Sequence record: MZ443769.1
DNA: 64,000 nt
Strand: one strand, 5' to 3'
The position numbers were made by a program, and so were the translations under genes. Below, in pieces: positions 1,816-54,107 of this stretch. Below the pieces are notes generated by a model, which saw nothing but the letters and a program-made list of their open reading frames with translations, was not told where the DNA came from and searched no databases. Every line of letters starts with the position of its first letter. Position 1 is the stretch's first letter.

Positions 1816-4308
1816 ATGGCCAAAGAGAAGAAAGTAAAAGAACCCAAAGCTAAGAAAGCAAAAGCTGTTGCTTCGGACGATGTGGGTGGAAAAGAGATTA
1901 AGGTGTTTAGTCTCTCAAGCATGATGGACGACACGCTCGATCTCATTGAGAAGAAAACGAAAGTAAGTTCTCAGGATGCAGCGCGTCACGCACCACGTAT
2001 CTCAACTGGTGTGCTCGCTCTCGATATGTATCTCGATGGCGGTATTGTACCTGGTGGCTGGTACACATTCGCAGGCGGTGAGCAGTCCTGTAAGTCTACG
2101 ATGACCATGAGTATCATGGCGTCTCTGATTCGACTGAAATATAAAGGGACCAGCGTAGTATTCGACTACGAAGGTTCAACCGATGCTGACTACGTTGCTG
2201 GTCAGTTGAAAACGTTTGGCGTTACTGTCGATCCGAAAACAATCTTCGGTGTGCGTGATACTGATGGTGGCGGCTGGATCATCAAACCTCAGATCCGCTA
2301 CTACGCACCTGATAACGGTGAGCGCTTCTTCGATTACATGTCGATGCTGCGTCGTCGTCTGCCGAACAAAATCGTTGAGAAAGACGGCTCTGCGTATTAC
2401 GTCTTTGAGAACACCAAAGAGAACGCGAAGAAAGTCGCTGGCTTCTACGATAAGAAGTGGTTCAGTCGTAACAACGAATTCAAAGTACCTGCCGAAGATG
2501 CACACATGCAGGCTATGGTTATCGTTGACTCATATCCGGCCATGATGCCTGATGCTGTCGATGATGACGATGGTTCAAAAGCAATGGCGATGCAGGCGCG
2601 TATGTTCTCTGACGGTATCAAACGTTTCCGTGGCGGTATGCGTCGTAAGATGATGACTATCGTTGGCGTTAACCAGATTCGTCTGAAACCTGCTGTGATG
2701 TTCGGCCCGCCTGAGTACGAGCCGTGTGGTGAAGCGTTGAAGTTCTATTGCTTCGCGTCTGACACTAACATCCGTACTGATCACGGTGTGCTGACTGCAC
2801 CTCAGATCAAAGAGCTGCTGGATGATGGTAAAGACGTTAGCGTTGAATCGTTCGACGGCTTCCAACAGATCGTTCAGGCGTGGAAAGTCGATGACGCTCC
2901 ATTCCCTATCGAGCTGTACGCTGGTGGTCACGCATATGTTGGCAGTGCAGAGCACCGTCAGTTCACGCTGATGCACGACACAACCGATGATGGTATGCGT
3001 GTGTTACGCCCTGAGTGGAACACGCTCAATCAGCTTGCGCAATTCCCAAGCGCCGAAGGCCAGTACGCAGCGTTGCGTGTTGCTAAAGTTGAAGAACTGA
3101 AACAGCATACGCCTGACGTGTATGATGAATCTTCCGCTGCTGTTAAACGCCTACTCGCTAACTGCGATCCACAAAGCAAGCAACTGCCTCTCGTATCTAA
3201 AGGTGATACGACGTATGCAGCGAACTGCCTCGTGATTGATATGGTTGGTGATAGCACTGACCAGTCAGACTTCGAGCTGTGGGTTAAGCACTTCATGAAC
3301 ATCGGTATCTTGGCGTTTGCTGATGCTAACGGTATCTGGTTGCCGGGTCTGCATAAGCATGAGCTGGAAGAAGCCTTAGTTCAAGATGCTCTCGGTGCAC
3401 ACGCAGGTATCAGTGATGCTTCGTCCGCTCGTCAACGTCAGACTCAGATGCTGACTGTGATCGCTGACGTATTCCCTGAACTGACTCGTTACGTCCTCGA
3501 CTACAACCTGACTAACGAGCCTATATATCTGGCTCCTGGTTATGATTTCGCGGAAGCGCTTGACGCAATTCTGCATAAAGAAATCAGCGGTTACGACGAC
3601 CAGTACGATCTGCTGATGACTCAGCTTGCGTACATCGAAGACTGGTACACGGTCTGTGACTCAATCGTTCCTGTTCCGTTCTCTCTTCGCGCTCTCGACC
3701 GTGCTGTTGAGTTCTGGGATGTTAACGTTGCATCAACCTCAGTCGTTATCACGAACAACTTCGCATCGCATAACAGTGACGTGCGCGTTCGTCTGACTTC
3801 TCGCGCTGTGCCTCAGGGCTGGCCTGTGATGAAAGACGCTCACGGTATCGTCGGCGAGAAGTCTGTTACTGTTGAAGGTGGTACTGACCGCTATCGTTTC
3901 ATTGCGGCTAAGACTACCAAGAACAAGATGGGTGGCATCCCGAATCAGCAAACGTGGATGCGTTTGTGGGAAGCAGATGGTAATGGTGAAGCGCGTGGCT
4001 TCGACCCAGTGTTTGACTGCTGGCATTATCTGAAAACCCTGGGCTTGATCAACGGTACGCGCAAGAACTTCAAAATGAAAGCGCCGTGTCCTCTCGCATC
4101 TGATGTTAAGATCGATTGGGACGAGTTCCGTACTTTGATCAACGGTAACAAGCAACAAATCATTGACGTGTGTCGTAAGCTGAAAGTGAAGAAGCCTCTG
4201 TCTCTGCGTACGTGGTGCTTCAAGTTCGTGCAGTCCACACAGGGCAAAGAGATGTTGAAAGCGTCTATCAGTAAGTCGGCTAAGGTCGAAGACGACGAAG
4301 ACGATTAA
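1816..4308 (+). CDS. recA: RecA/UvsX-family recombinase, intein-containing
   Basis: ISTGVLALDMYLDGGIVPG, Walker A GGEQSCKST, Walker B VIVDS, AMQARMFS, NQIR, GEALKFY; about 488 aa after splicing. Confidence 0.9.
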   Translation: MAKEKKVKEPKAKKAKAVASDDVGGKEIKVFSLSSMMDDTLDLIEKKTKVSSQDAARHAPRISTGVLALDMYLDGGIVPGGWYTFAGGEQSCKSTMTMSIMASLIRLKYKGTSVVFDYEGSTDADYVAGQLKTFGVTVDPKTIFGVRDTDGGGWIIKPQIRYYAPDNGERFFDYMSMLRRRLPNKIVEKDGSAYYVFENTKENAKKVAGFYDKKWFSRNNEFKVPAEDAHMQAMVIVDSYPAMMPDAVDDDDGSKAMAMQARMFSDGIKRFRGGMRRKMMTIVGVNQIRLKPAVMFGPPEYEPCGEALKFYCFASDTNIRTDHGVLTAPQIKELLDDGKDVSVESFDGFQQIVQAWKVDDAPFPIELYAGGHAYVGSAEHRQFTLMHDTTDDGMRVLRPEWNTLNQLAQFPSAEGQYAALRVAKVEELKQHTPDVYDESSAAVKRLLANCDPQSKQLPLVSKGDTTYAANCLVIDMVGDSTDQSDFELWVKHFMNIGILAFADANGIWLPGLHKHELEEALVQDALGAHAGISDASSARQRQTQMLTVIADVFPELTRYVLDYNLTNEPIYLAPGYDFAEALDAILHKEISGYDDQYDLLMTQLAYIEDWYTVCDSIVPVPFSLRALDRAVEFWDVNVASTSVVITNNFASHNSDVRVRLTSRAVPQGWPVMKDAHGIVGEKSVTVEGGTDRYRFIAAKTTKNKMGGIPNQQTWMRLWEADGNGEARGFDPVFDCWHYLKTLGLINGTRKNFKMKAPCPLASDVKIDWDEFRTLINGNKQQIIDVCRKLKVKKPLSLRTWCFKFVQSTQGKEMLKASISKSAKVEDDEDD
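2749..3774 (+). mobile_element. Intein (342 aa) in RecA/UvsX
   Basis: Block A CFASDTNIRTDHG directly after ALKFY; block B SAEH; blocks F/G FWDVNV...NNFASHN followed by +1 Ser (SDVRVRL), which restores the RecA ALKFY-S-VR motif. Confidence 0.9.
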
Positions 4309-5641: not shown

Positions 5642-6661
5642 ATGTCTAAAGAAACTTACTTAGAAGTACATGATGCCTATATTGCAAACAATTTCTTGCA
5701 GGATATTCCACGTTCTAAGCTGACAGCTCGCTTCACTGAATATTTGAATCGTGTCAAAGGCGTTGTTCCTTCCAACGGTATTCCTATGGCTGAATTCTTG
5801 CAGTGGGCAAACATGATGCCAGCTAAGGACGAGGAGATCGATTCCCGTAGAATGCTGTTTACGGTTGGCATTGTCTACACGCATTTCATCTGGTCGTTCA
5901 CTAAAGCCTCCTATGTTGTTGAGCGTGACATATGGAAGCATCTTGTCGAGAGCGACTCTCCAAAAATACTACCGTCTGCTACACTCAAGCAACTCCCTCA
6001 CTGGTCTCAGTGGATTGCAGCACCAGTTACTGTCACACACAAAGACAGCAAGTCCGATACATCTTACATAATTGATTCGGATGGTTTCTGGGCGACCTAT
6101 GCAAATTTCAACGAAACAACCCACATGAACCTGGCCTTTGTTGGGTCTATCAGCATTAATAACGACCGTCATATAATGCACATGCAACTTATCTTTGACA
6201 TTACCAAAGATATGGAATTGATTGATGGTTTCGATTGGTTCATGTTTATATTAGGTGAAAATGGAAGTTCACACATAGACCCGAGTACACCAGAAGGTCC
6301 TGTCGTAGCTCGTATTCTTGAAGAATTTATGAAGCCTGTTGTCAACGTTCTTTTGTTCATTGCATCGGAAGTAGACAACATCTACAAGGGAGGTATGAAA
6401 AGGTTTAAACCTCGTAAGCAGGGTAACTCATACAAAGTTATACCAGTGCGCGATGTAAGAGAGTGGCGAGTAGGTACAGAGTTACTTAATGAAATTCGTA
6501 CTTACGAAAACGAAGTAGAGACTGCGAAGTCGCAAGGCCGTCGTGCTCATATACGACGCGGCCATTATCATAACTACTGGTACGGTCCGCGTACTGGTGA
6601 CCGTCAGCTCAAATCAAGATGGGTTCCACCTTGTGTTGTTAGAGGCACCATCGAAGATTGA
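5642..6661 (+). CDS. AcrVA2/FinQ-family-like protein
   Basis: C-terminal AHIRRGHYHNYWYG...RWVPPCVV plus upstream LP.W, GFWA.Y, LLF...D..YKG and G..L..E.R.Y blocks are colinear with AcrVA2 as recalled. Start placed at ATG 5642, after the terminator. Confidence 0.65.
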   Translation: MSKETYLEVHDAYIANNFLQDIPRSKLTARFTEYLNRVKGVVPSNGIPMAEFLQWANMMPAKDEEIDSRRMLFTVGIVYTHFIWSFTKASYVVERDIWKHLVESDSPKILPSATLKQLPHWSQWIAAPVTVTHKDSKSDTSYIIDSDGFWATYANFNETTHMNLAFVGSISINNDRHIMHMQLIFDITKDMELIDGFDWFMFILGENGSSHIDPSTPEGPVVARILEEFMKPVVNVLLFIASEVDNIYKGGMKRFKPRKQGNSYKVIPVRDVREWRVGTELLNEIRTYENEVETAKSQGRRAHIRRGHYHNYWYGPRTGDRQLKSRWVPPCVVRGTIED

Positions 6662-7542: not shown

Positions 7543-7803
7543 ATGTGCGGACGTAGCCTAGTACGGTTGAAGTATCTCGCACGGTCCTCGAACTGGTGCA
7601 ACAATAAAGTAAACGCTTGTAATAAGCGGAAGGCGAAGCATGTACAGTGTGAAGAATTTCTGGCAGCCACGAAAGGTTGTAGCACTGTCCAACTCTCGCC
7701 CAGTGTTATCTCGTTCTATTGTAATTCTGAACTGGTCGGTCAGACAGTATGGCATGAAATAGAAGGCGATAATTCACTTCAATTCCGTCTGTTACTCGCA
7801 TAG
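7543..7803 (+). CDS. small Cys-rich hypothetical protein
   Basis: 86 aa, GGAG RBS 6 nt before the ATG; atypical composition. Confidence 0.45.
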   Translation: MCGRSLVRLKYLARSSNWCNNKVNACNKRKAKHVQCEEFLAATKGCSTVQLSPSVISFYCNSELVGQTVWHEIEGDNSLQFRLLLA

Positions 7804-7806
7804 TCT

Positions 7807-7847
7807 AAAGGGCTGTCAGAAATCAATCTGATGGCCCTTTCTCTTTT
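7807..7847 (+). terminator. Rho-independent terminator
   Basis: AAAGGGCTGTCAGA-AATCAA-TCTGATGGCCCTTT then CTCTTTT. Confidence 0.75.
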
Positions 7848-7911
7848 ATACGCTAATTTTTAAACGTATAAACGCGCGGTGTTCCGCTACCTCACTCTAA
7901 GGATATTCATT

Positions 7912-8844
7912 ATGTCTTTGATTAAACTCGAAGGCGTTGCATCTACTTCTGCTGTATCAAAAGCACAGAAAGATGCGGCTGTCTACATGTTCGGTTCTAA
8001 AGGTCACAGCATTGTTGCAGTGCTTGACAAGTTCGCTCGCGCAAAAGAAATTCAGGCGCCGCACCTTGCTGGTATTCTCGCGCTGATGAAAGATGGTGAA
8101 GATGACGAAATCATCAAATTCACATCGTCCGCTGCTGGGAAGAAGTCTATCGTTGCTGCGAAGCAATTCGCTATTGCAAAAACGTTTACGAACGCAATCA
8201 AATACCTGAAACTGATTCGCGTTCCGATGAAGTGGATTCCAGGCCACTCTGATACTGCGGCTGCACGTATTCAACAAACCGAAACTATTCGTGCAAGCAA
8301 ACGCGCTTCTACAAAACCTGAGAAGCCTATCAAGCTTGATAACCCTCATGCACCTGAAGCCGTAGAGCAAGAACAAACCAAAGCGTCTGCCGCTATCAAC
8401 AAGATTTGGGACCTGTCTAAGTTCAAATCAAATCTTCTTGATTCGTCTTGGTCTGCGTTGATCACTGCATTCAACACAGAGTTCAAAGGTCGCTATGTGT
8501 TGAAACTGAACAAGCGTGAAGGTGCATTCCGCATCAACACTCTCAATGGCGGTTACTCTGGTCGTGGTGAAGCATTCCTGTCTGCTGCTTTCGAAAACAA
8601 TTCGTGGGTAATGTTTGCCAACGACCCTGCGACTAAGAGTGCTGCATTCGATAGTTGGTACGTCGGTCCTAAACTGACATTCGCAACAATCGTTTCGTAT
8701 CTGAGCAACGAACTTGCTGGTCCTCATTCCGGTGAGAAGCAAGAGATCGATAAGCTGATCGCTGGCGCTGTTATCTTCCCGCACAATGATCGCTATTACG
8801 ATGCGACAGAAGACCAGCCGAAAAAGACTACTGCAAAAAAGTAG
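7912..8844 (+). CDS. hypothetical protein (zero-frame product of candidate -1 frameshift gene)
   Basis: 310 aa, AAGGA RBS; ends GCA AAA AAG TAG. Confidence 0.85.
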   Translation: MSLIKLEGVASTSAVSKAQKDAAVYMFGSKGHSIVAVLDKFARAKEIQAPHLAGILALMKDGEDDEIIKFTSSAAGKKSIVAAKQFAIAKTFTNAIKYLKLIRVPMKWIPGHSDTAAARIQQTETIRASKRASTKPEKPIKLDNPHAPEAVEQEQTKASAAINKIWDLSKFKSNLLDSSWSALITAFNTEFKGRYVLKLNKREGAFRINTLNGGYSGRGEAFLSAAFENNSWVMFANDPATKSAAFDSWYVGPKLTFATIVSYLSNELAGPHSGEKQEIDKLIAGAVIFPHNDRYYDATEDQPKKTTAKK

Positions 8845-8900
8845 TTACCAGTGCACCTGCTGCATACACTCCTTCGGGGAAAAGCGCAGATACACTGGTA
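8835..8900 (+). other. candidate -1 programmed ribosomal frameshift signal
   Basis: In-phase A_AAA_AAG (8835-8841), stop codon, then stem TACCAGTG (8846-8853)/CACTGGTA (8893-8900) enclosing a cUUCGg hairpin. Confidence 0.55.
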
Positions 8901-9545
8901 GACGAAATCGCAGAAACTCCTGCCAAGAAAATTGCAGCGAAAGGTCTTCGCGAGAAAGAAGAATACTTTGCTGCACTAGCTACGGTGCTAGGTCGTAACT
9001 TGCCTGCATATCGCGTAGAAGCAACGCACGAAGGTGTGACTGTTACACGTGGCTCGAAGGTCAACACTGTGCGTCTCGGCGAAAAAGCTTGGACCATTCA
9101 GATGGGCATCACTGCTAAACTGAAATCACTCGGCGCCAAGTTTGATATCGTTGATCTGCTTGGTATGATTGACAAAGGTATCGCCAGCCCAAAGCTTAAA
9201 GCCGGAGTTCCCGGCCAAGCAATGCCGATGCCTTACTTTGATGCCGTGAAGAAGAACGCGCAAGACGGAACGTATGATACCGTTATCTACATGGAAGCTG
9301 ATCGAATTTATCCTCTGGCGCTCAAGCGTGAAGGGAATATGTTCACAATGAAAGTTTCTATGTTCGGCCCTATTCAGCATTTCATCACTCAAGGTATTCA
9401 GGAGTGTGGTGCAACGCTGACTGGTGTGACGGGTAGATCATTCACGTTCAATGAAGACGATGCCAACGCATTTGAGAAGTGGCTTAAAGCTCAACGTAGA
9501 CCGAAGACGCTTTCGACCAAATATCTGATGCCACAGGCTTTGTAG
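8841..9545 (+). CDS. hypothetical protein domain in -1 frame (possible C-terminal extension of 7912 ORF)
   Basis: Frame is open and protein-like from 8841 (VVTSAPAAYTPSGKSADTLVDEIAE...); the first start codon, GTG 8985, has no SD. Confidence 0.7.
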   Translation, partial: VVTSAPAAYTPSGKSADTLVDEIAETPAKKIAAKGLREKEEYFAALATVLGRNLPAYRVEATHEGVTVTRGSKVNTVRLGEKAWTIQMGITAKLKSLGAKFDIVDLLGMIDKGIASPKLKAGVPGQAMPMPYFDAVKKNAQDGTYDTVIYMEADRIYPLALKREGNMFTMKVSMFGPIQHFITQGIQECGATLTGVTGRSFTFNEDDANAFEKWLKAQRRPKTLSTKYLMPQAL

Positions 9546-9562
9546 TAGCAACTGCTTGAACC

Positions 9563-9591
9563 AAAAAGGGGTGCCTTCGGGTGCCCCTTTT
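9563..9591. terminator. Rho-independent terminator (possibly bidirectional)
   Basis: AAAAAGGGGTGCC-TTCG-GGTGCCCCTTTT. Confidence 0.8.
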
Positions 9592-9668
9592 GCGTCTCTG
9601 TACGCCGTTAAAAGCACTAAAAATCGACCTCATATCGCTACATATAATAGACCGCACATCTGCTGAAC

Positions 9669-9724
9669 TCTGCATATAATAGGCTAAAATAGCGCTAGAT
9701 TTGAGGTACTGAATATGATATACT
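9669..9724 (+). promoter_or_regulatory. class I phage promoter
   Basis: TCTGCATATAAT-AGGCTAAAATAG, 26 nt, then (TGa)TATACT. Confidence 0.75.
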
Positions 9725-35530: not shown

Positions 35531-36472
35531 ATGACTAAAATGGTTACTATGCCGTGGGCAACTTCTGAGCAACGCAATGACTTTTTCTCTACGCAAGTAC
35601 GGCAGTTAGACTTACATCCTGTGTGGAGCTATGTCGAAGTGCAAAACAATCCTCAGTGGAAAGGTGACCCGCTGCTTCACCACATGCACTATCATTCGAC
35701 AGAGCACATGAAGCAGGTAACTGCACTTGCATTGTGGATGCTGACAGAAGAAATGCAGTACGCATGGCAGTATGAAAACGGTGCGCTGCCGCTGGCCGTC
35801 GCGTGTATGTTCCACGATATGCACCACTCACTTGGTCGTCTTAATGATTCAGGCAATATTCTCATTGCCAAAGATGCTTTCAAAAAGTATCTGACCTTCT
35901 GTACAGACCAACGTATTATTGATCAGCAAGAAATCATTCTTGAACTGATTGGCATTACCGAATTCCCTTACATGAAGAACAGACAGCCGAAGAATCTGAT
36001 TGAGCGCTGTATTCGTGATGCAGATATTCTCTACGGTATGCAGGATGACGCAATGGACGTAGTGCTATTTGCTCTGCGTCGTGAAGTGAATCGCAGCGTC
36101 AATACTAATACGCGCTACAACCAAGAACAGTGGGCTACAGGCCGTGTTGACTTCCTCATGTCCGTTGAGATGTACACACCTACTGCGAATGCAATCATGG
36201 CCTGGGCATTAGCTGAGGATAACGATCACAACCATCAATCTAAGATTGATAGCTGGGCGAAAGAGAATGTATACTTCCGTGATACGACTGCACACCAGCT
36301 AAAAGCTAATGACGTGTTGTTCATTGATACGCAGGAAGACAGTACTCCGAAACGCCGTCTGATCGAAAGTGTTGAGACAGTTCATCCATACCTGAACATA
36401 TACTTCCACGACGGCTCTGCTATCTCGCTGCGTGATGGAGAGAGCTGCGTGGTATGCGAAAGACGCAAATAA
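35531..36472 (+). CDS. HD-domain phosphohydrolase
   Basis: YHSTEH...ACMFHDMHH...IRDADIL: H...HD...D metal ligands. Confidence 0.8.
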   Translation: MTKMVTMPWATSEQRNDFFSTQVRQLDLHPVWSYVEVQNNPQWKGDPLLHHMHYHSTEHMKQVTALALWMLTEEMQYAWQYENGALPLAVACMFHDMHHSLGRLNDSGNILIAKDAFKKYLTFCTDQRIIDQQEIILELIGITEFPYMKNRQPKNLIERCIRDADILYGMQDDAMDVVLFALRREVNRSVNTNTRYNQEQWATGRVDFLMSVEMYTPTANAIMAWALAEDNDHNHQSKIDSWAKENVYFRDTTAHQLKANDVLFIDTQEDSTPKRRLIESVETVHPYLNIYFHDGSAISLRDGESCVVCERRK

Positions 36473-41869: not shown

Positions 41870-41891
41870 TACATGCGGTTTGCCTGACGTG

Positions 41892-41940
41892 CCTCACACT
41901 CAACCACGCATTTGCGGGTGGCATAGTCGGGCTCTTTTTG
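41892..41940 (+). terminator. long hairpin terminator
   Basis: GCCTGAC-GTGCC...GGCAT-AGTCGGGC then TCTTTTT. Confidence 0.55.
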
Positions 41941-51738: not shown

Positions 51739-52299
51739 ATGGCAAAAGCTACTAAAGGTACTAATCTGGTTCCGACCATTGTTTCCCGTATCGCAAAGAA
51801 AGCTGGTTCTATCGGAACTACCAAAGTTAAGCCAACTGATCTGCCGCACGACATTCTGATTGAAAGCGTTCACGCTTCTGAAATCGTCGGTTTCATCACA
51901 GACCGTTCTGCTACCAGCGTAACGATTCGTCACAAACGTGGCCACGGTTCTTCTGCTCAAATCGTTTCTACTTTCGGTCCTGGTCAACTGCTGACTGTTC
52001 TGGGTGAAGCCGGTTCTCACGGTCAAGTCCGTGCAATCGTGACTGCACCAGTGTGTGAGCTGAAAGGTTACACTGTTAAATTCGACGGCGCAATCATCAT
52101 CGCCACCTCAATCGAAACGGGCGAAGTGATCAACGTTAACACCAACCTGCCGGGCTACACTGTTCGCGCTACTGTTAACGAAAACGCTGCTGCTAAAAAG
52201 TACGGCACTGCTGCGCCAGTTAAAAACAAAAAAGTTGAAAAGTCTGACAAAGCCGGTAAATCTGCGAAAGCGATTAAAGGCGGCAAAGTAAAAAAGTAA
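51739..52299 (+). CDS. hypothetical beta-rich protein with Lys-rich C-tail
   Basis: GGAG RBS; strong high-expression codon bias. Confidence 0.9.
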   Translation: MAKATKGTNLVPTIVSRIAKKAGSIGTTKVKPTDLPHDILIESVHASEIVGFITDRSATSVTIRHKRGHGSSAQIVSTFGPGQLLTVLGEAGSHGQVRAIVTAPVCELKGYTVKFDGAIIIATSIETGEVINVNTNLPGYTVRATVNENAAAKKYGTAAPVKNKKVEKSDKAGKSAKAIKGGKVKK

Positions 52300-54007: not shown

Positions 54008-54038
54008 AAAGTAATCGCTGAGGCGGTTGCTTAAATTT

Positions 54039-54071
54039 AAGAGGGCAGCGCTGACGGGCGTTTGCCCTCTT
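54039..54071. terminator. stem-loop after H1-like gene
   Basis: AAGAGGGCAGCGC-TGACGG-GCGTTTGCCCTCTT. Confidence 0.6.
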
Positions 54072-54107
54072 GTCGTATCTAGCACAATTTTTTTGAAGGA
54101 AGTTCAA

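What the first reader, a model, noticed from the sequence alone, without database searches (positions are those of the whole stretch)
8835..9545. Candidate dnaX-type -1 programmed frameshift fusing two ORFs into a ~544-aa protein
Seen: ORF 7912 ends GCA AAA AAG TAG, an in-phase A_AAA_AAG heptamer (8835-8841) directly before the stop. Four nt later a perfect 8-bp stem (TACCAGTG 8846-8853 / CACTGGTA 8893-8900) encloses CTGC/GCAG and a cUUCGg hairpin. The -1 frame runs stop-free from 8841 to 9545, and its 48 codons before the listed GTG read as natural protein (KKVVTSAPAAYTPSGKSADTLVDEIAETPAKK); that GTG has no SD. Established: A_AAA_AAG plus a 3' stem drives efficient -1 frameshifting in E. coli dnaX and IS elements. 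Inference: two products (310 and ~544 aa) at a fixed ratio, in a gene that is not in a tail-chaperone context. Alternative: one A missing from the homopolymer (sequencing error or mutation).
Basis: partly seen in the sequence, partly recalled or inferred. Interest (0 to 1): 0.8.

Follow-up and report, generated by a model that had tools for sequence, protein, structure and literature searches.

The report
Unannotated -1 frameshift in phage gene
Two neighbouring "hypothetical" genes of an Erwinia jumbo phage are most likely one gene, read partly through a ribosomal -1 frameshift at a classic slippery site. This would give a short and a long protein; it is a new example of a well-known mechanism, in a gene of unknown function.

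Summary
The window is Erwinia jumbo phage pEp_SNUABM_52 (100%) / vB_EamM_Y3 (99.7%). ORF 7912-8844 ends in an in-phase A_AAA_AAG followed at once by TAG. A 57-nt stem-loop (8845-8901, -22.3 kcal/mol) follows, and the -1 frame stays open to 9545.

Thirty related phages of other genera have both halves in the same reading frame; four fetched ones annotate one CDS. The 48 codons before the annotated GTG hold no start codon, yet they encode conserved helices that are confidently predicted as part of a folded domain.

The cassette is kept in five independent assemblies, which form three Y3-like lineages. Against the most diverged lineage, 6 of 6 substitutions in the start-less stretch are synonymous third positions of the -1 frame.

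The stem-loop occurs only where the shift site occurs: -20.8 to -23.5 kcal/mol, against -9.4 to -16.5 in 14 relatives. One distinct metagenomic relative carries another in-phase heptamer (C_CCA_AAG) plus its own hairpin at the same kind of linker.

Verdict: -1 ribosomal frameshifting is in use and gives products of 310 and 544 aa. It is not annotated in GenBank, the protein's function is unknown, and efficiency is unmeasured. It is a new member of a known kind.

The parts
7912..9545 (+). Whole recoded gene unit. GenBank annotates it as two hypothetical proteins, pEaSNUABM52_00251/00252 = Y3_249/250. Products would be 310 aa (0 frame) and 544 aa (0 frame followed by the -1 frame).
   Evidence: The two halves lie in the same reading frame in 30 related phages; four fetched examples annotate one CDS.
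7912..8844 (+). 0-frame ORF (310 codons plus TAG). It holds a conserved, mainly helical N-domain (about residues 1-150), a second variable module and a Lys/Ala/Thr-rich linker.
8835..8841 (+). In-phase slippery heptamer A_AAA_AAG.
   Evidence: It is identical in Y3, L020/L024 and L021. The motif class is among the most efficient in E. coli (PMC4066793; PMC5009743).
8842..8844 (+). 0-frame stop codon TAG, directly 3' of the heptamer.
8845..8901 (+). Extended stem-loop, the candidate 3' stimulator. Lower stem 8845-8853/8893-8901, middle helix 8857-8863/8884-8889, apical hairpin 8869-8879.
   Evidence: -22.3 kcal/mol, z -3.6; top 0.4% of windows; p 0.024 against synonymous recoding; stable only in lineages with the site.
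8841..9545 (+). -1 frame coding segment of 234 codons plus stop. AlphaFold2 predicts two domains, about residues 8-115 (nt 8862-9185) and 125-225 (nt 9213-9515). The annotated GTG at 8985 lies inside the first domain.
7807..7850 (+). Terminator-like hairpin plus T tract upstream of the gene.
9563..9592 (+). Terminator-like GC-rich hairpin plus T run downstream of the gene. No such + strand element lies between the two ORFs.
   Evidence: Read. Windows here are among the most stable in the 64 kb. The strict scan did not call it.

Best explanation
One mRNA, bounded by terminator-like hairpins, carries a single modular gene. Most ribosomes read 7912-8844 and stop at TAG, giving a 310-aa protein.

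A fraction slips back one base on A_AAA_AAG while the two Lys-tRNAs occupy the P and A sites. The slip is helped by the stem-loop, whose first pair sits about 11 nt from the first P-site base, at the mRNA entrance. Those ribosomes continue in the -1 frame to 9545 and make a 544-aa protein that adds two further folded domains.

Shown here: the signals, their conservation, the selection on the -1 frame, and the lineage-specific hairpin. Inferred: that slippage is ribosomal, what its efficiency is, and whether the short/long ratio is adaptive or is a compensated, fixed frame change in what was once a continuous ORF. The protein's function is unknown. It belongs to a domain-shuffled family confined to Erwinia, Dickeya, Yersinia and Salmonella-associated jumbo phages.
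For: 1. The heptamer is in phase, with TAG directly after it.

2. The -1 frame has no start codon for 48 codons. Yet tblastn homology to relatives begins at residue 1-9 of that frame. In 30 related phages both halves lie in the same frame, and the four fetched examples annotate a single CDS.

3. Window against L020: 6 of 6 substitutions in 8845-8984 are third positions of the -1 frame and synonymous, while 0 of 6 are synonymous in the other two frames. That gives p about 0.0014. Over the whole -1 segment, 17 of 20 substitutions are synonymous.

4. AlphaFold2 of the -1 product has mean pLDDT 87.5. Residues 11-50, which lie upstream of the annotated GTG, are helices with pLDDT above 90 inside domain 1.

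5. The cassette is identical in the Swiss isolate Y3, the Korean isolate, JGI contig L021 and SRA contigs L020/L024. It stays so despite amino-acid changes or a whole module swap just upstream.

6. The hairpin is unusually stable: z -3.6, top 0.4%, p 0.024 against synonymous recoding. The homologous 60 nt fold at -20.8 to -23.5 kcal/mol in the three variants with the site, but at -9.4 to -16.5 in 14 relatives.

7. L019, a different lineage, has an in-phase C_CCA_AAG one codon before its stop, a -1 ORF whose homology starts 6-13 codons later, and its own hairpin.

8. The literature supports the motif. V_VVA_AAG heptamers shift about 0.3% alone and up to 54% with a strong 3' structure (PMC4066793). 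Shift-proneness rests on the single tRNA-Lys (PMC5009743).
Against: - No protein, ribosome-profiling or RNA data exist for this gene.
- The selection test rests on 6 substitutions and one pairwise comparison.
- The three lineages that carry the cassette are close (at most about 3% divergence), so the site is young.
- The stem arms are invariant, so there is no covariation.
- The spacer is 3-4 nt, shorter than usually described for 3' stimulators.
- There is no 5' Shine-Dalgarno-like stimulator.
- All more distant relatives manage with a continuous ORF, so the arrangement could be a tolerated or compensated single frame change rather than an evolved two-product design.
- L019 is a single assembled contig with no relatives that share its site.
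- An in-phase A_AAA_AAG plus stop also occurs by chance at 52290.
Confidence: 0.8

Rival explanations
1. The gene simply carries one fixed frame change, a real mutation in the Y3-like lineage. Under this reading the downstream half is a young, not yet decayed remnant, and the heptamer and hairpin have no role.
For: Every more distant relative has a continuous ORF. Frame changes arise preferentially in base runs, so a run at the junction is expected. The carriers are closely related. L025 shows that plain frame changes do occur in this family: it has two, with no in-phase heptamer.
Against: All 6 substitutions in the start-less stretch, and 17 of 20 over the -1 segment, are synonymous in the -1 frame. 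The cassette survived a module swap directly upstream. An unusually stable hairpin is present only in the carriers. The -1 frame has stayed open for 234 codons.
Confidence: 0.1
2. The frame is changed at the RNA level. RNA polymerase slips on the A run, so that a share of transcripts encodes the long protein directly.
For: The site is a homopolymer. Transcriptional slippage is a known alternative route to the same products (PMC5009743, title and abstract).
Against: From general knowledge, not tested here: a run of six is shorter than the runs usually associated with efficient slippage. This model gives no role to the in-phase register, to the adjacent stop or to the lineage-specific 3' hairpin. 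The L019 site has no long run of one base.
Confidence: 0.05
3. The second ORF is translated on its own, from the annotated GTG at 8985 or from a non-canonical start, as GenBank implies.
For: Both GenBank records and automatic gene callers annotate a 186-aa ORF from that GTG.
Against: No Shine-Dalgarno-like motif precedes the GTG. Homology, the synonymous-only substitutions (three of them within 35 nt of the stop) and confident helices all lie upstream of it. There is no ATG, GTG or TTG between 8790 and 8984 in that frame. A product starting at the GTG would lack three helices of its domain.
Confidence: 0.03
4. Sequencing or assembly error in the base run.
For: Homopolymers are error-prone on some platforms.
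Against: The run and stop are the same in two isolates sequenced in different countries and in three independent public read sets or metagenomes.
Confidence: 0.02

Closest known systems
E. coli dnaX (tau/gamma) -1 frameshift
   Same: It has the same heptamer A_AAA_AAG, decoded by the single tRNA-Lys, and a simple or extended stem-loop just 3' as stimulator (PMC5009743).
   Different: dnaX also uses a 5' Shine-Dalgarno-like stimulator, which is absent here. In dnaX the shifted ribosomes stop almost at once and make the shorter product; here they make the longer one. The proteins are unrelated (no Pfam match). The spacer here is shorter.
IS3-family / IS911 OrfA-OrfAB transframe fusion
   Same: A_AAA_AAG is the commonest heptamer in these elements. 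The 0-frame stop lies close to the site. The -1 ORF has no start of its own, and the shift makes a longer fusion protein. The 3' stimulators are stem-loops, three-way junctions or pseudoknots.
   Different: This is not a transposase and there is no IS context. IS911 also has a 5' stimulator.
Tailed-phage tail assembly chaperone gpG/gpGT
   Same: A phage gene near whose 3' end a minority of ribosomes shift -1, producing a C-terminally extended protein at a set ratio.
   Different: The genomic context is different: the neighbourhood holds a RecA-domain protein and small unknown genes, not the major tail and tape-measure genes. There is no family match. The site is not conserved across the wider family.
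Phage T7 gene 10A/10B, and C-terminal accessory domains added to phage structural proteins by frameshift
   Same: A -1 shift near the end of an ORF adds extra C-terminal sequence to a fraction of the molecules (reference list of PMC5009743).
   Different: The motif type and stimulators differ. It is not known here whether the protein is a structural one.
Halothiobacillus neapolitanus carboxysome cso2 frameshift
   Same: A bacterial -1 shift that is driven by a 3' stem-loop, apparently without a 5' Shine-Dalgarno stimulator.
   Different: The protein is unrelated and the gene is cellular, not phage.

Membership tests
Bacterial-type -1 programmed ribosomal frameshift cassette | In-phase X_XXY_YYZ heptamer that lets both tRNAs re-pair in the -1 frame. 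| tested here: met
   A_AAA_AAG at 8835-8841 is in phase with the ORF that starts at 7912.
Bacterial-type -1 programmed ribosomal frameshift cassette | An overlapping -1 ORF without its own initiation signal that nevertheless shows a coding signature. | tested here: met
   There is no start codon in 8790-8984. Homology begins at residue 1-9. All 6 substitutions there are synonymous in the -1 frame. The stretch is predicted as confident helices.
Bacterial-type -1 programmed ribosomal frameshift cassette | A stable RNA structure 3' of the heptamer. | tested here: met
   Hairpin at 8845-8901: -22.3 kcal/mol, z -3.6; top 0.4% of windows; p 0.024 against synonymous recoding; absent from 14 relatives without the site.
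Bacterial-type -1 programmed ribosomal frameshift cassette | A spacer of roughly 5-9 nt between heptamer and structure. | tested here: inconclusive
   The spacer is 4 nt, or 3 if the G-U pair forms. The first pair lies about 11 nt from the first P-site base. Whether that still stimulates cannot be computed.
Bacterial-type -1 programmed ribosomal frameshift cassette | Conservation of the cassette among relatives. | tested here: met
   It is kept in three Y3-like lineages from five assemblies. It is absent from other genera, which have a continuous ORF, so conservation is shallow.
Bacterial-type -1 programmed ribosomal frameshift cassette | The transframe protein is observed. | not testable with these tools
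   No proteomic data were found. The Y3 paper is not held, and the AD1 paper has no proteomics.
dnaX-type signal specifically | A 5' Shine-Dalgarno-like stimulator upstream of the heptamer. | tested here: not met
   No GGAG/AGGA-like motif lies in the 25 nt upstream, neither in the window nor in L020.
dnaX-type signal specifically | The protein is DNA polymerase III tau/gamma, and the shift truncates the product. | tested here: not met
   There is no Pfam family match for either half. Here the shift extends the product by 234 residues.
Phage tail assembly chaperone G/GT | A position between the major tail and tape-measure genes, and membership of the chaperone family. | tested here: not met
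   The neighbours are a RecA-domain protein and small unknown ORFs. There is no Pfam or PHROG match.
IS3-family OrfAB | Transposase domains and an IS context. | tested here: not met
   No Pfam or PHROG transposase match. The locus is syntenic across the phages.

The most novel reading that the evidence does not exclude
-1 frameshift cassettes (heptamer, stop and a newly evolved hairpin) may have arisen at least twice, independently. Both lie at inter-domain linkers of one domain-shuffled jumbo-phage protein family whose ancestors had a continuous ORF. One is A_AAA_AAG in Y3-like phages; the other is C_CCA_AAG in the L019 lineage. This would be a caught-in-the-act example of how recoding is born. 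It would also be a way for a phage to set the proportion of molecules that carry the C-terminal modules.
Probability: 0.35. Interest if true: 0.6.

Novelty: new member of a known kind. Interest (0 to 1): 0.45.

Why it matters
Practically, two GenBank records (and RefSeq) mis-annotate this gene as two hypothetical proteins, the second from a false GTG start. The real long product is 544 aa and has four modules.

Scientifically, it adds a documented candidate for -1 frameshifting outside the tail-chaperone slot of a tailed phage, in a jumbo phage. It comes with an unusually clear evolutionary contrast: sister genera have a continuous ORF and no hairpin, while the carriers have heptamer, stop and hairpin together. 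That contrast is useful for studying how recoding signals originate.

The mechanism itself is textbook, so the surprise to a specialist is moderate.

Tried and rejected
Function searches all came back empty:
- Pfam and PHROGs for both halves and two relatives.
- A PDB profile search.
- Foldseek against PDB. Foldseek against BFVD found only uncharacterised relatives.
- The AlphaFold2 model of the first half was too poor to use (pLDDT 48.8).
- There is no internal sequence repeat between the modules.

No Rfam family matches the region.

Searches for more carriers mostly failed:
- IMG/VR returned only the known phages plus one metagenomic relative with a continuous ORF.
- Two metagenome scans and one genome scan found nothing.
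- The L019-type split has no second example.

Literature: the Y3 description is not held. The AD1 paper has no proteomics. No paper links jumbo phages of this group with programmed frameshifting.

Considered and rejected:
- Sequencing error, because five independent assemblies agree.
- Independent initiation at the GTG.
- The UUCG-type loop as a conserved feature, because it is substituted in Y3 and L020.
- The heptamer-plus-stop pattern as evidence in itself, because a chance twin sits at 52290.
- The second hairpin at 8933-8975 as a lineage-specific element, because the contrast with relatives is only modest.

Full report
**Identity of the window.** Megablast places 7800-9700 at 100% identity in Erwinia phage pEp_SNUABM_52 (MZ443769, Korea). 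It is 99.7% identical to vB_EamM_Y3 (KY984068, Switzerland). Both are 261-kb jumbo phages of the genus Sasquatchvirus that infect Erwinia amylovora. Both records annotate the finding's ORFs as two separate hypothetical proteins: 7912-8844, and a 186-aa ORF from the GTG at 8985.

**The observation.**
- The ORF from the ATG at 7912 ends GCA AAA AAG TAG, so A_AAA_AAG (8835-8841) is in phase as X_XXY_YYZ, with the stop directly after it.
- Four bases later an 8-bp stem (9 bp with a G-U pair) encloses a second helix and an apical hairpin.
- RNAfold gives -22.3 kcal/mol for 8842-8905, z -3.6, with no shuffle of 200 as stable.
- The -1 frame is open from 8790 to 9545. Its first possible start codon is the GTG at 8985, which has no Shine-Dalgarno-like motif.

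The heptamer with its stop is not remarkable by itself. The + strand of the window has ten AAAAAAG, three of them in phase. The one at 52290 is also followed directly by a stop, but its -1 frame closes after nine codons. The hairpin, in contrast, is in the top 0.4% of all 60-nt windows of the 64 kb, a set that includes the terminators. It is also more stable than 97.6% of synonymous recodings of the same peptide.

**What relatives show.** I searched the two halves separately and never joined them.
- Both halves hit the same set of Erwinia and Dickeya jumbo phages (Alexandravirus and allies). In all 30 distinct non-Y3 phages listed, the two hits lie in the same reading frame. This is my arithmetic on the coordinates.
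- In the four relatives I fetched, both hits lie inside one annotated CDS, of 270 to 690 aa.
- The alignment shows a conserved N-domain of about 150 residues, a variable number of shuffled middle modules joined by Lys/Ala/Pro-rich linkers, a conserved module that begins with a Y-T-P-S-G-K-S motif, and in some phages a further C-terminal module.
- In the window that conserved motif, and the 40 residues after it, are encoded in the -1 frame between the TAG and the annotated GTG. No start codon exists there.
- AlphaFold2 of the -1 product gives mean pLDDT 87.5 and two domains. Residues 11-50, which lie upstream of the GTG-encoded residue 49, form three helices of the first domain with pLDDT above 90. 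The annotated start would therefore cut a domain.

**Is the arrangement kept, and is the -1 frame used?** A search of the large protein collection with the first half found three informative sequences.
- P0001/L021 (JGI metagenome 3300029799) differs from the window at 15 of 945 nt, including amino-acid changes a few codons before the site. It keeps the heptamer, the stop and the start of the stem.
- P0003/L020 comes from SRR29211247, with an identical contig L024 from SRR29211246. It is a Y3-like phage whose first roughly 480 nt of the ORF are 99% identical to the window. Its middle modules have been replaced by unrelated ones. Homology resumes about 8 nt before the heptamer, and the heptamer, stop and both stem arms are unchanged.
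- Between the window and L020, the start-less stretch 8845-8984 has six substitutions. All six are third positions of the -1 frame and synonymous there, and none is synonymous in the other two frames. The chance that six hits all fall on that one codon position is (1/3)^6, about 0.0014.
- Over the whole -1 segment, 17 of 20 substitutions are synonymous.
- Y3 differs from the window at four positions in the gene, and the site is identical.

Five independent assemblies therefore agree, which excludes a sequencing error. The -1 frame has also been under purifying selection since these lineages split, including where it can be reached only from the upstream ORF.

**The hairpin travels with the site.** I folded the homologous 20 codons around the conserved motif in every locus fetched.
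- The three variants that carry the shift site fold at -20.8 to -23.5 kcal/mol. Against synonymous resampling that is z -2.5 to -3.0, p about 0.01.
- The 14 relatives fold at -9.4 to -16.5 kcal/mol, z -1.9 to +0.6.
- The 3' arm lies in the conserved T-L-V-D codons and the 5' arm in the variable linker. The pairing was thus made by the linker sequence of this lineage.
- The arms do not vary among carriers, so there is no covariation evidence.
- The apical UUCG-like loop of the window is not conserved.

**A possible second, independent case.** P0004/L019 (DRR494324) is 55% identical to the window's first half and belongs to another lineage.
- Its ORF ends one codon after an in-phase C_CCA_AAG.
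- The overlap with the -1 frame is only 25 nt.
- The -1 frame runs 244 more codons. It is homologous to the interior of single-ORF relatives from its residue 6-13 on, which is upstream of both possible start codons.
- A hairpin follows two bases after the heptamer (-22.6 kcal/mol, z -2.4). The homologous stretch is less structured in five relatives: -7.0 to -13.6 against -19.5.
- C_CCA_AAG and A_AAA_AAG are among the three most efficient heptamers measured in E. coli (PMC4066793).
- L019 is a single contig with no relative that shares the site, so this case is suggestive only.

As a control, the homologue in L025 (ERR13298114) has two frame changes inside conserved modules. Each leaves a long frame overlap (262 and 223 nt) with no in-phase heptamer. 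That is what ordinary indels or read errors look like in this family.

**Mechanism.** The best explanation is ribosomal -1 slippage on A_AAA_AAG, stimulated by the 3' hairpin. It would yield a 310-aa product and a 544-aa product from one mRNA.
- The gene pair is flanked by terminator-like hairpins and has none between its two ORFs.
- According to the literature read here, such heptamers shift about 0.3% unaided (up to 3.7% in the best 3' context) and up to 54% with a strong structure.
- The strength of the dnaX stem correlates with efficiency, and a stem-loop can act without a 5' stimulator.
- Shift-proneness rests on a single tRNA-Lys reading both AAA and AAG. That Erwinia shares this property is my inference from its being in the Enterobacterales.
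- The window encodes no tRNA. The rest of the phage genome was not scanned.
- The spacer of 3-4 nt is shorter than usual, and there is no Shine-Dalgarno-like element upstream, so the efficiency cannot be guessed.
- It is also open whether the short/long ratio is an adaptation or whether this is 'corrective' frameshifting of a fixed frame change, a class recognised in PMC5009743. Both readings involve the same mechanism.

**Comparison with known systems.** The signals match the bacterial -1 frameshift cassette. The heptamer and simple 3' stem are as in dnaX. In layout, though, it is closer to IS3-family OrfAB or phage gpG/gpGT: the stop is adjacent, the -1 ORF has no start, and the fusion product is the longer one. 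It is not a member of any of those protein families, and it is not in a tail-chaperone context. I found no paper that reports this site.

**Function.** The function remains unknown. There is no Pfam, PHROG, PDB-sequence or Foldseek match beyond uncharacterised jumbo-phage relatives. The conserved N-domain with shuffled C-terminal modules is the family's only clue.

**Verdict.** It is a new member of a known kind, of moderate interest. The main value lies in correcting the annotation and in the clean picture of a young recoding site.

Noticed in passing
window 52290-52299: A second in-phase A_AAA_AAG is followed directly by a stop (TAA), at the end of ORF 51739-52299. The -1 frame closes after nine codons, so it is a chance twin of the finding's motif at a Lys-rich C-terminus.
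   Followed up: yes
window 8933-8975: A second stable hairpin lies about 92 nt 3' of the heptamer, inside conserved coding sequence (8925-9000 folds at -25.4 kcal/mol, z -3.1). It is kept in L020. It is only modestly more stable than the homologous stretch in relatives, so any role is unclear.
   Followed up: partly
L020 953-3015 (SRR29211247), identical to L024 (SRR29211246): A Y3-like phage in which the middle modules of the first ORF were replaced by unrelated ones. The N-domain, the shift cassette and the second ORF stayed 97-99% identical. The 3' edge of the swap lies about 8 nt before the heptamer.
   Followed up: yes
L019 3001-4646 (DRR494324): A distinct lineage with an in-phase C_CCA_AAG one codon before the stop, a hairpin of its own and a 244-codon conserved -1 ORF. 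The next gene carries a Phage_tail_beta Pfam hit. This arrangement is a singleton in the protein collection.
   Followed up: partly
L025 2501-4073 (ERR13298114): This homologue has two frame changes inside conserved modules and no in-phase slippery heptamer. It looks like ordinary indels or read errors and served as a negative control.
   Followed up: partly
window 1816-4308: An 830-aa ORF, annotated 'RecA protein' in Y3, matches the RecA Pfam model only over residues 234-313. The rest is unassigned.
   Followed up: no
window 54013-54090, 36394-36460, 41875-41940: These are the most stable 60-nt folds in the window (down to -28.2 kcal/mol). They are presumably terminators and were not examined.
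   Followed up: no
L018, L019, L022, L023, L025 (two to three genes upstream of the homologue): In relatives, a gene upstream of this family carries a precomputed AcrVA2-like Pfam hit (PF26125). The window's counterpart (5642-6661) gave no Pfam hit at E <= 0.001.
   Followed up: partly
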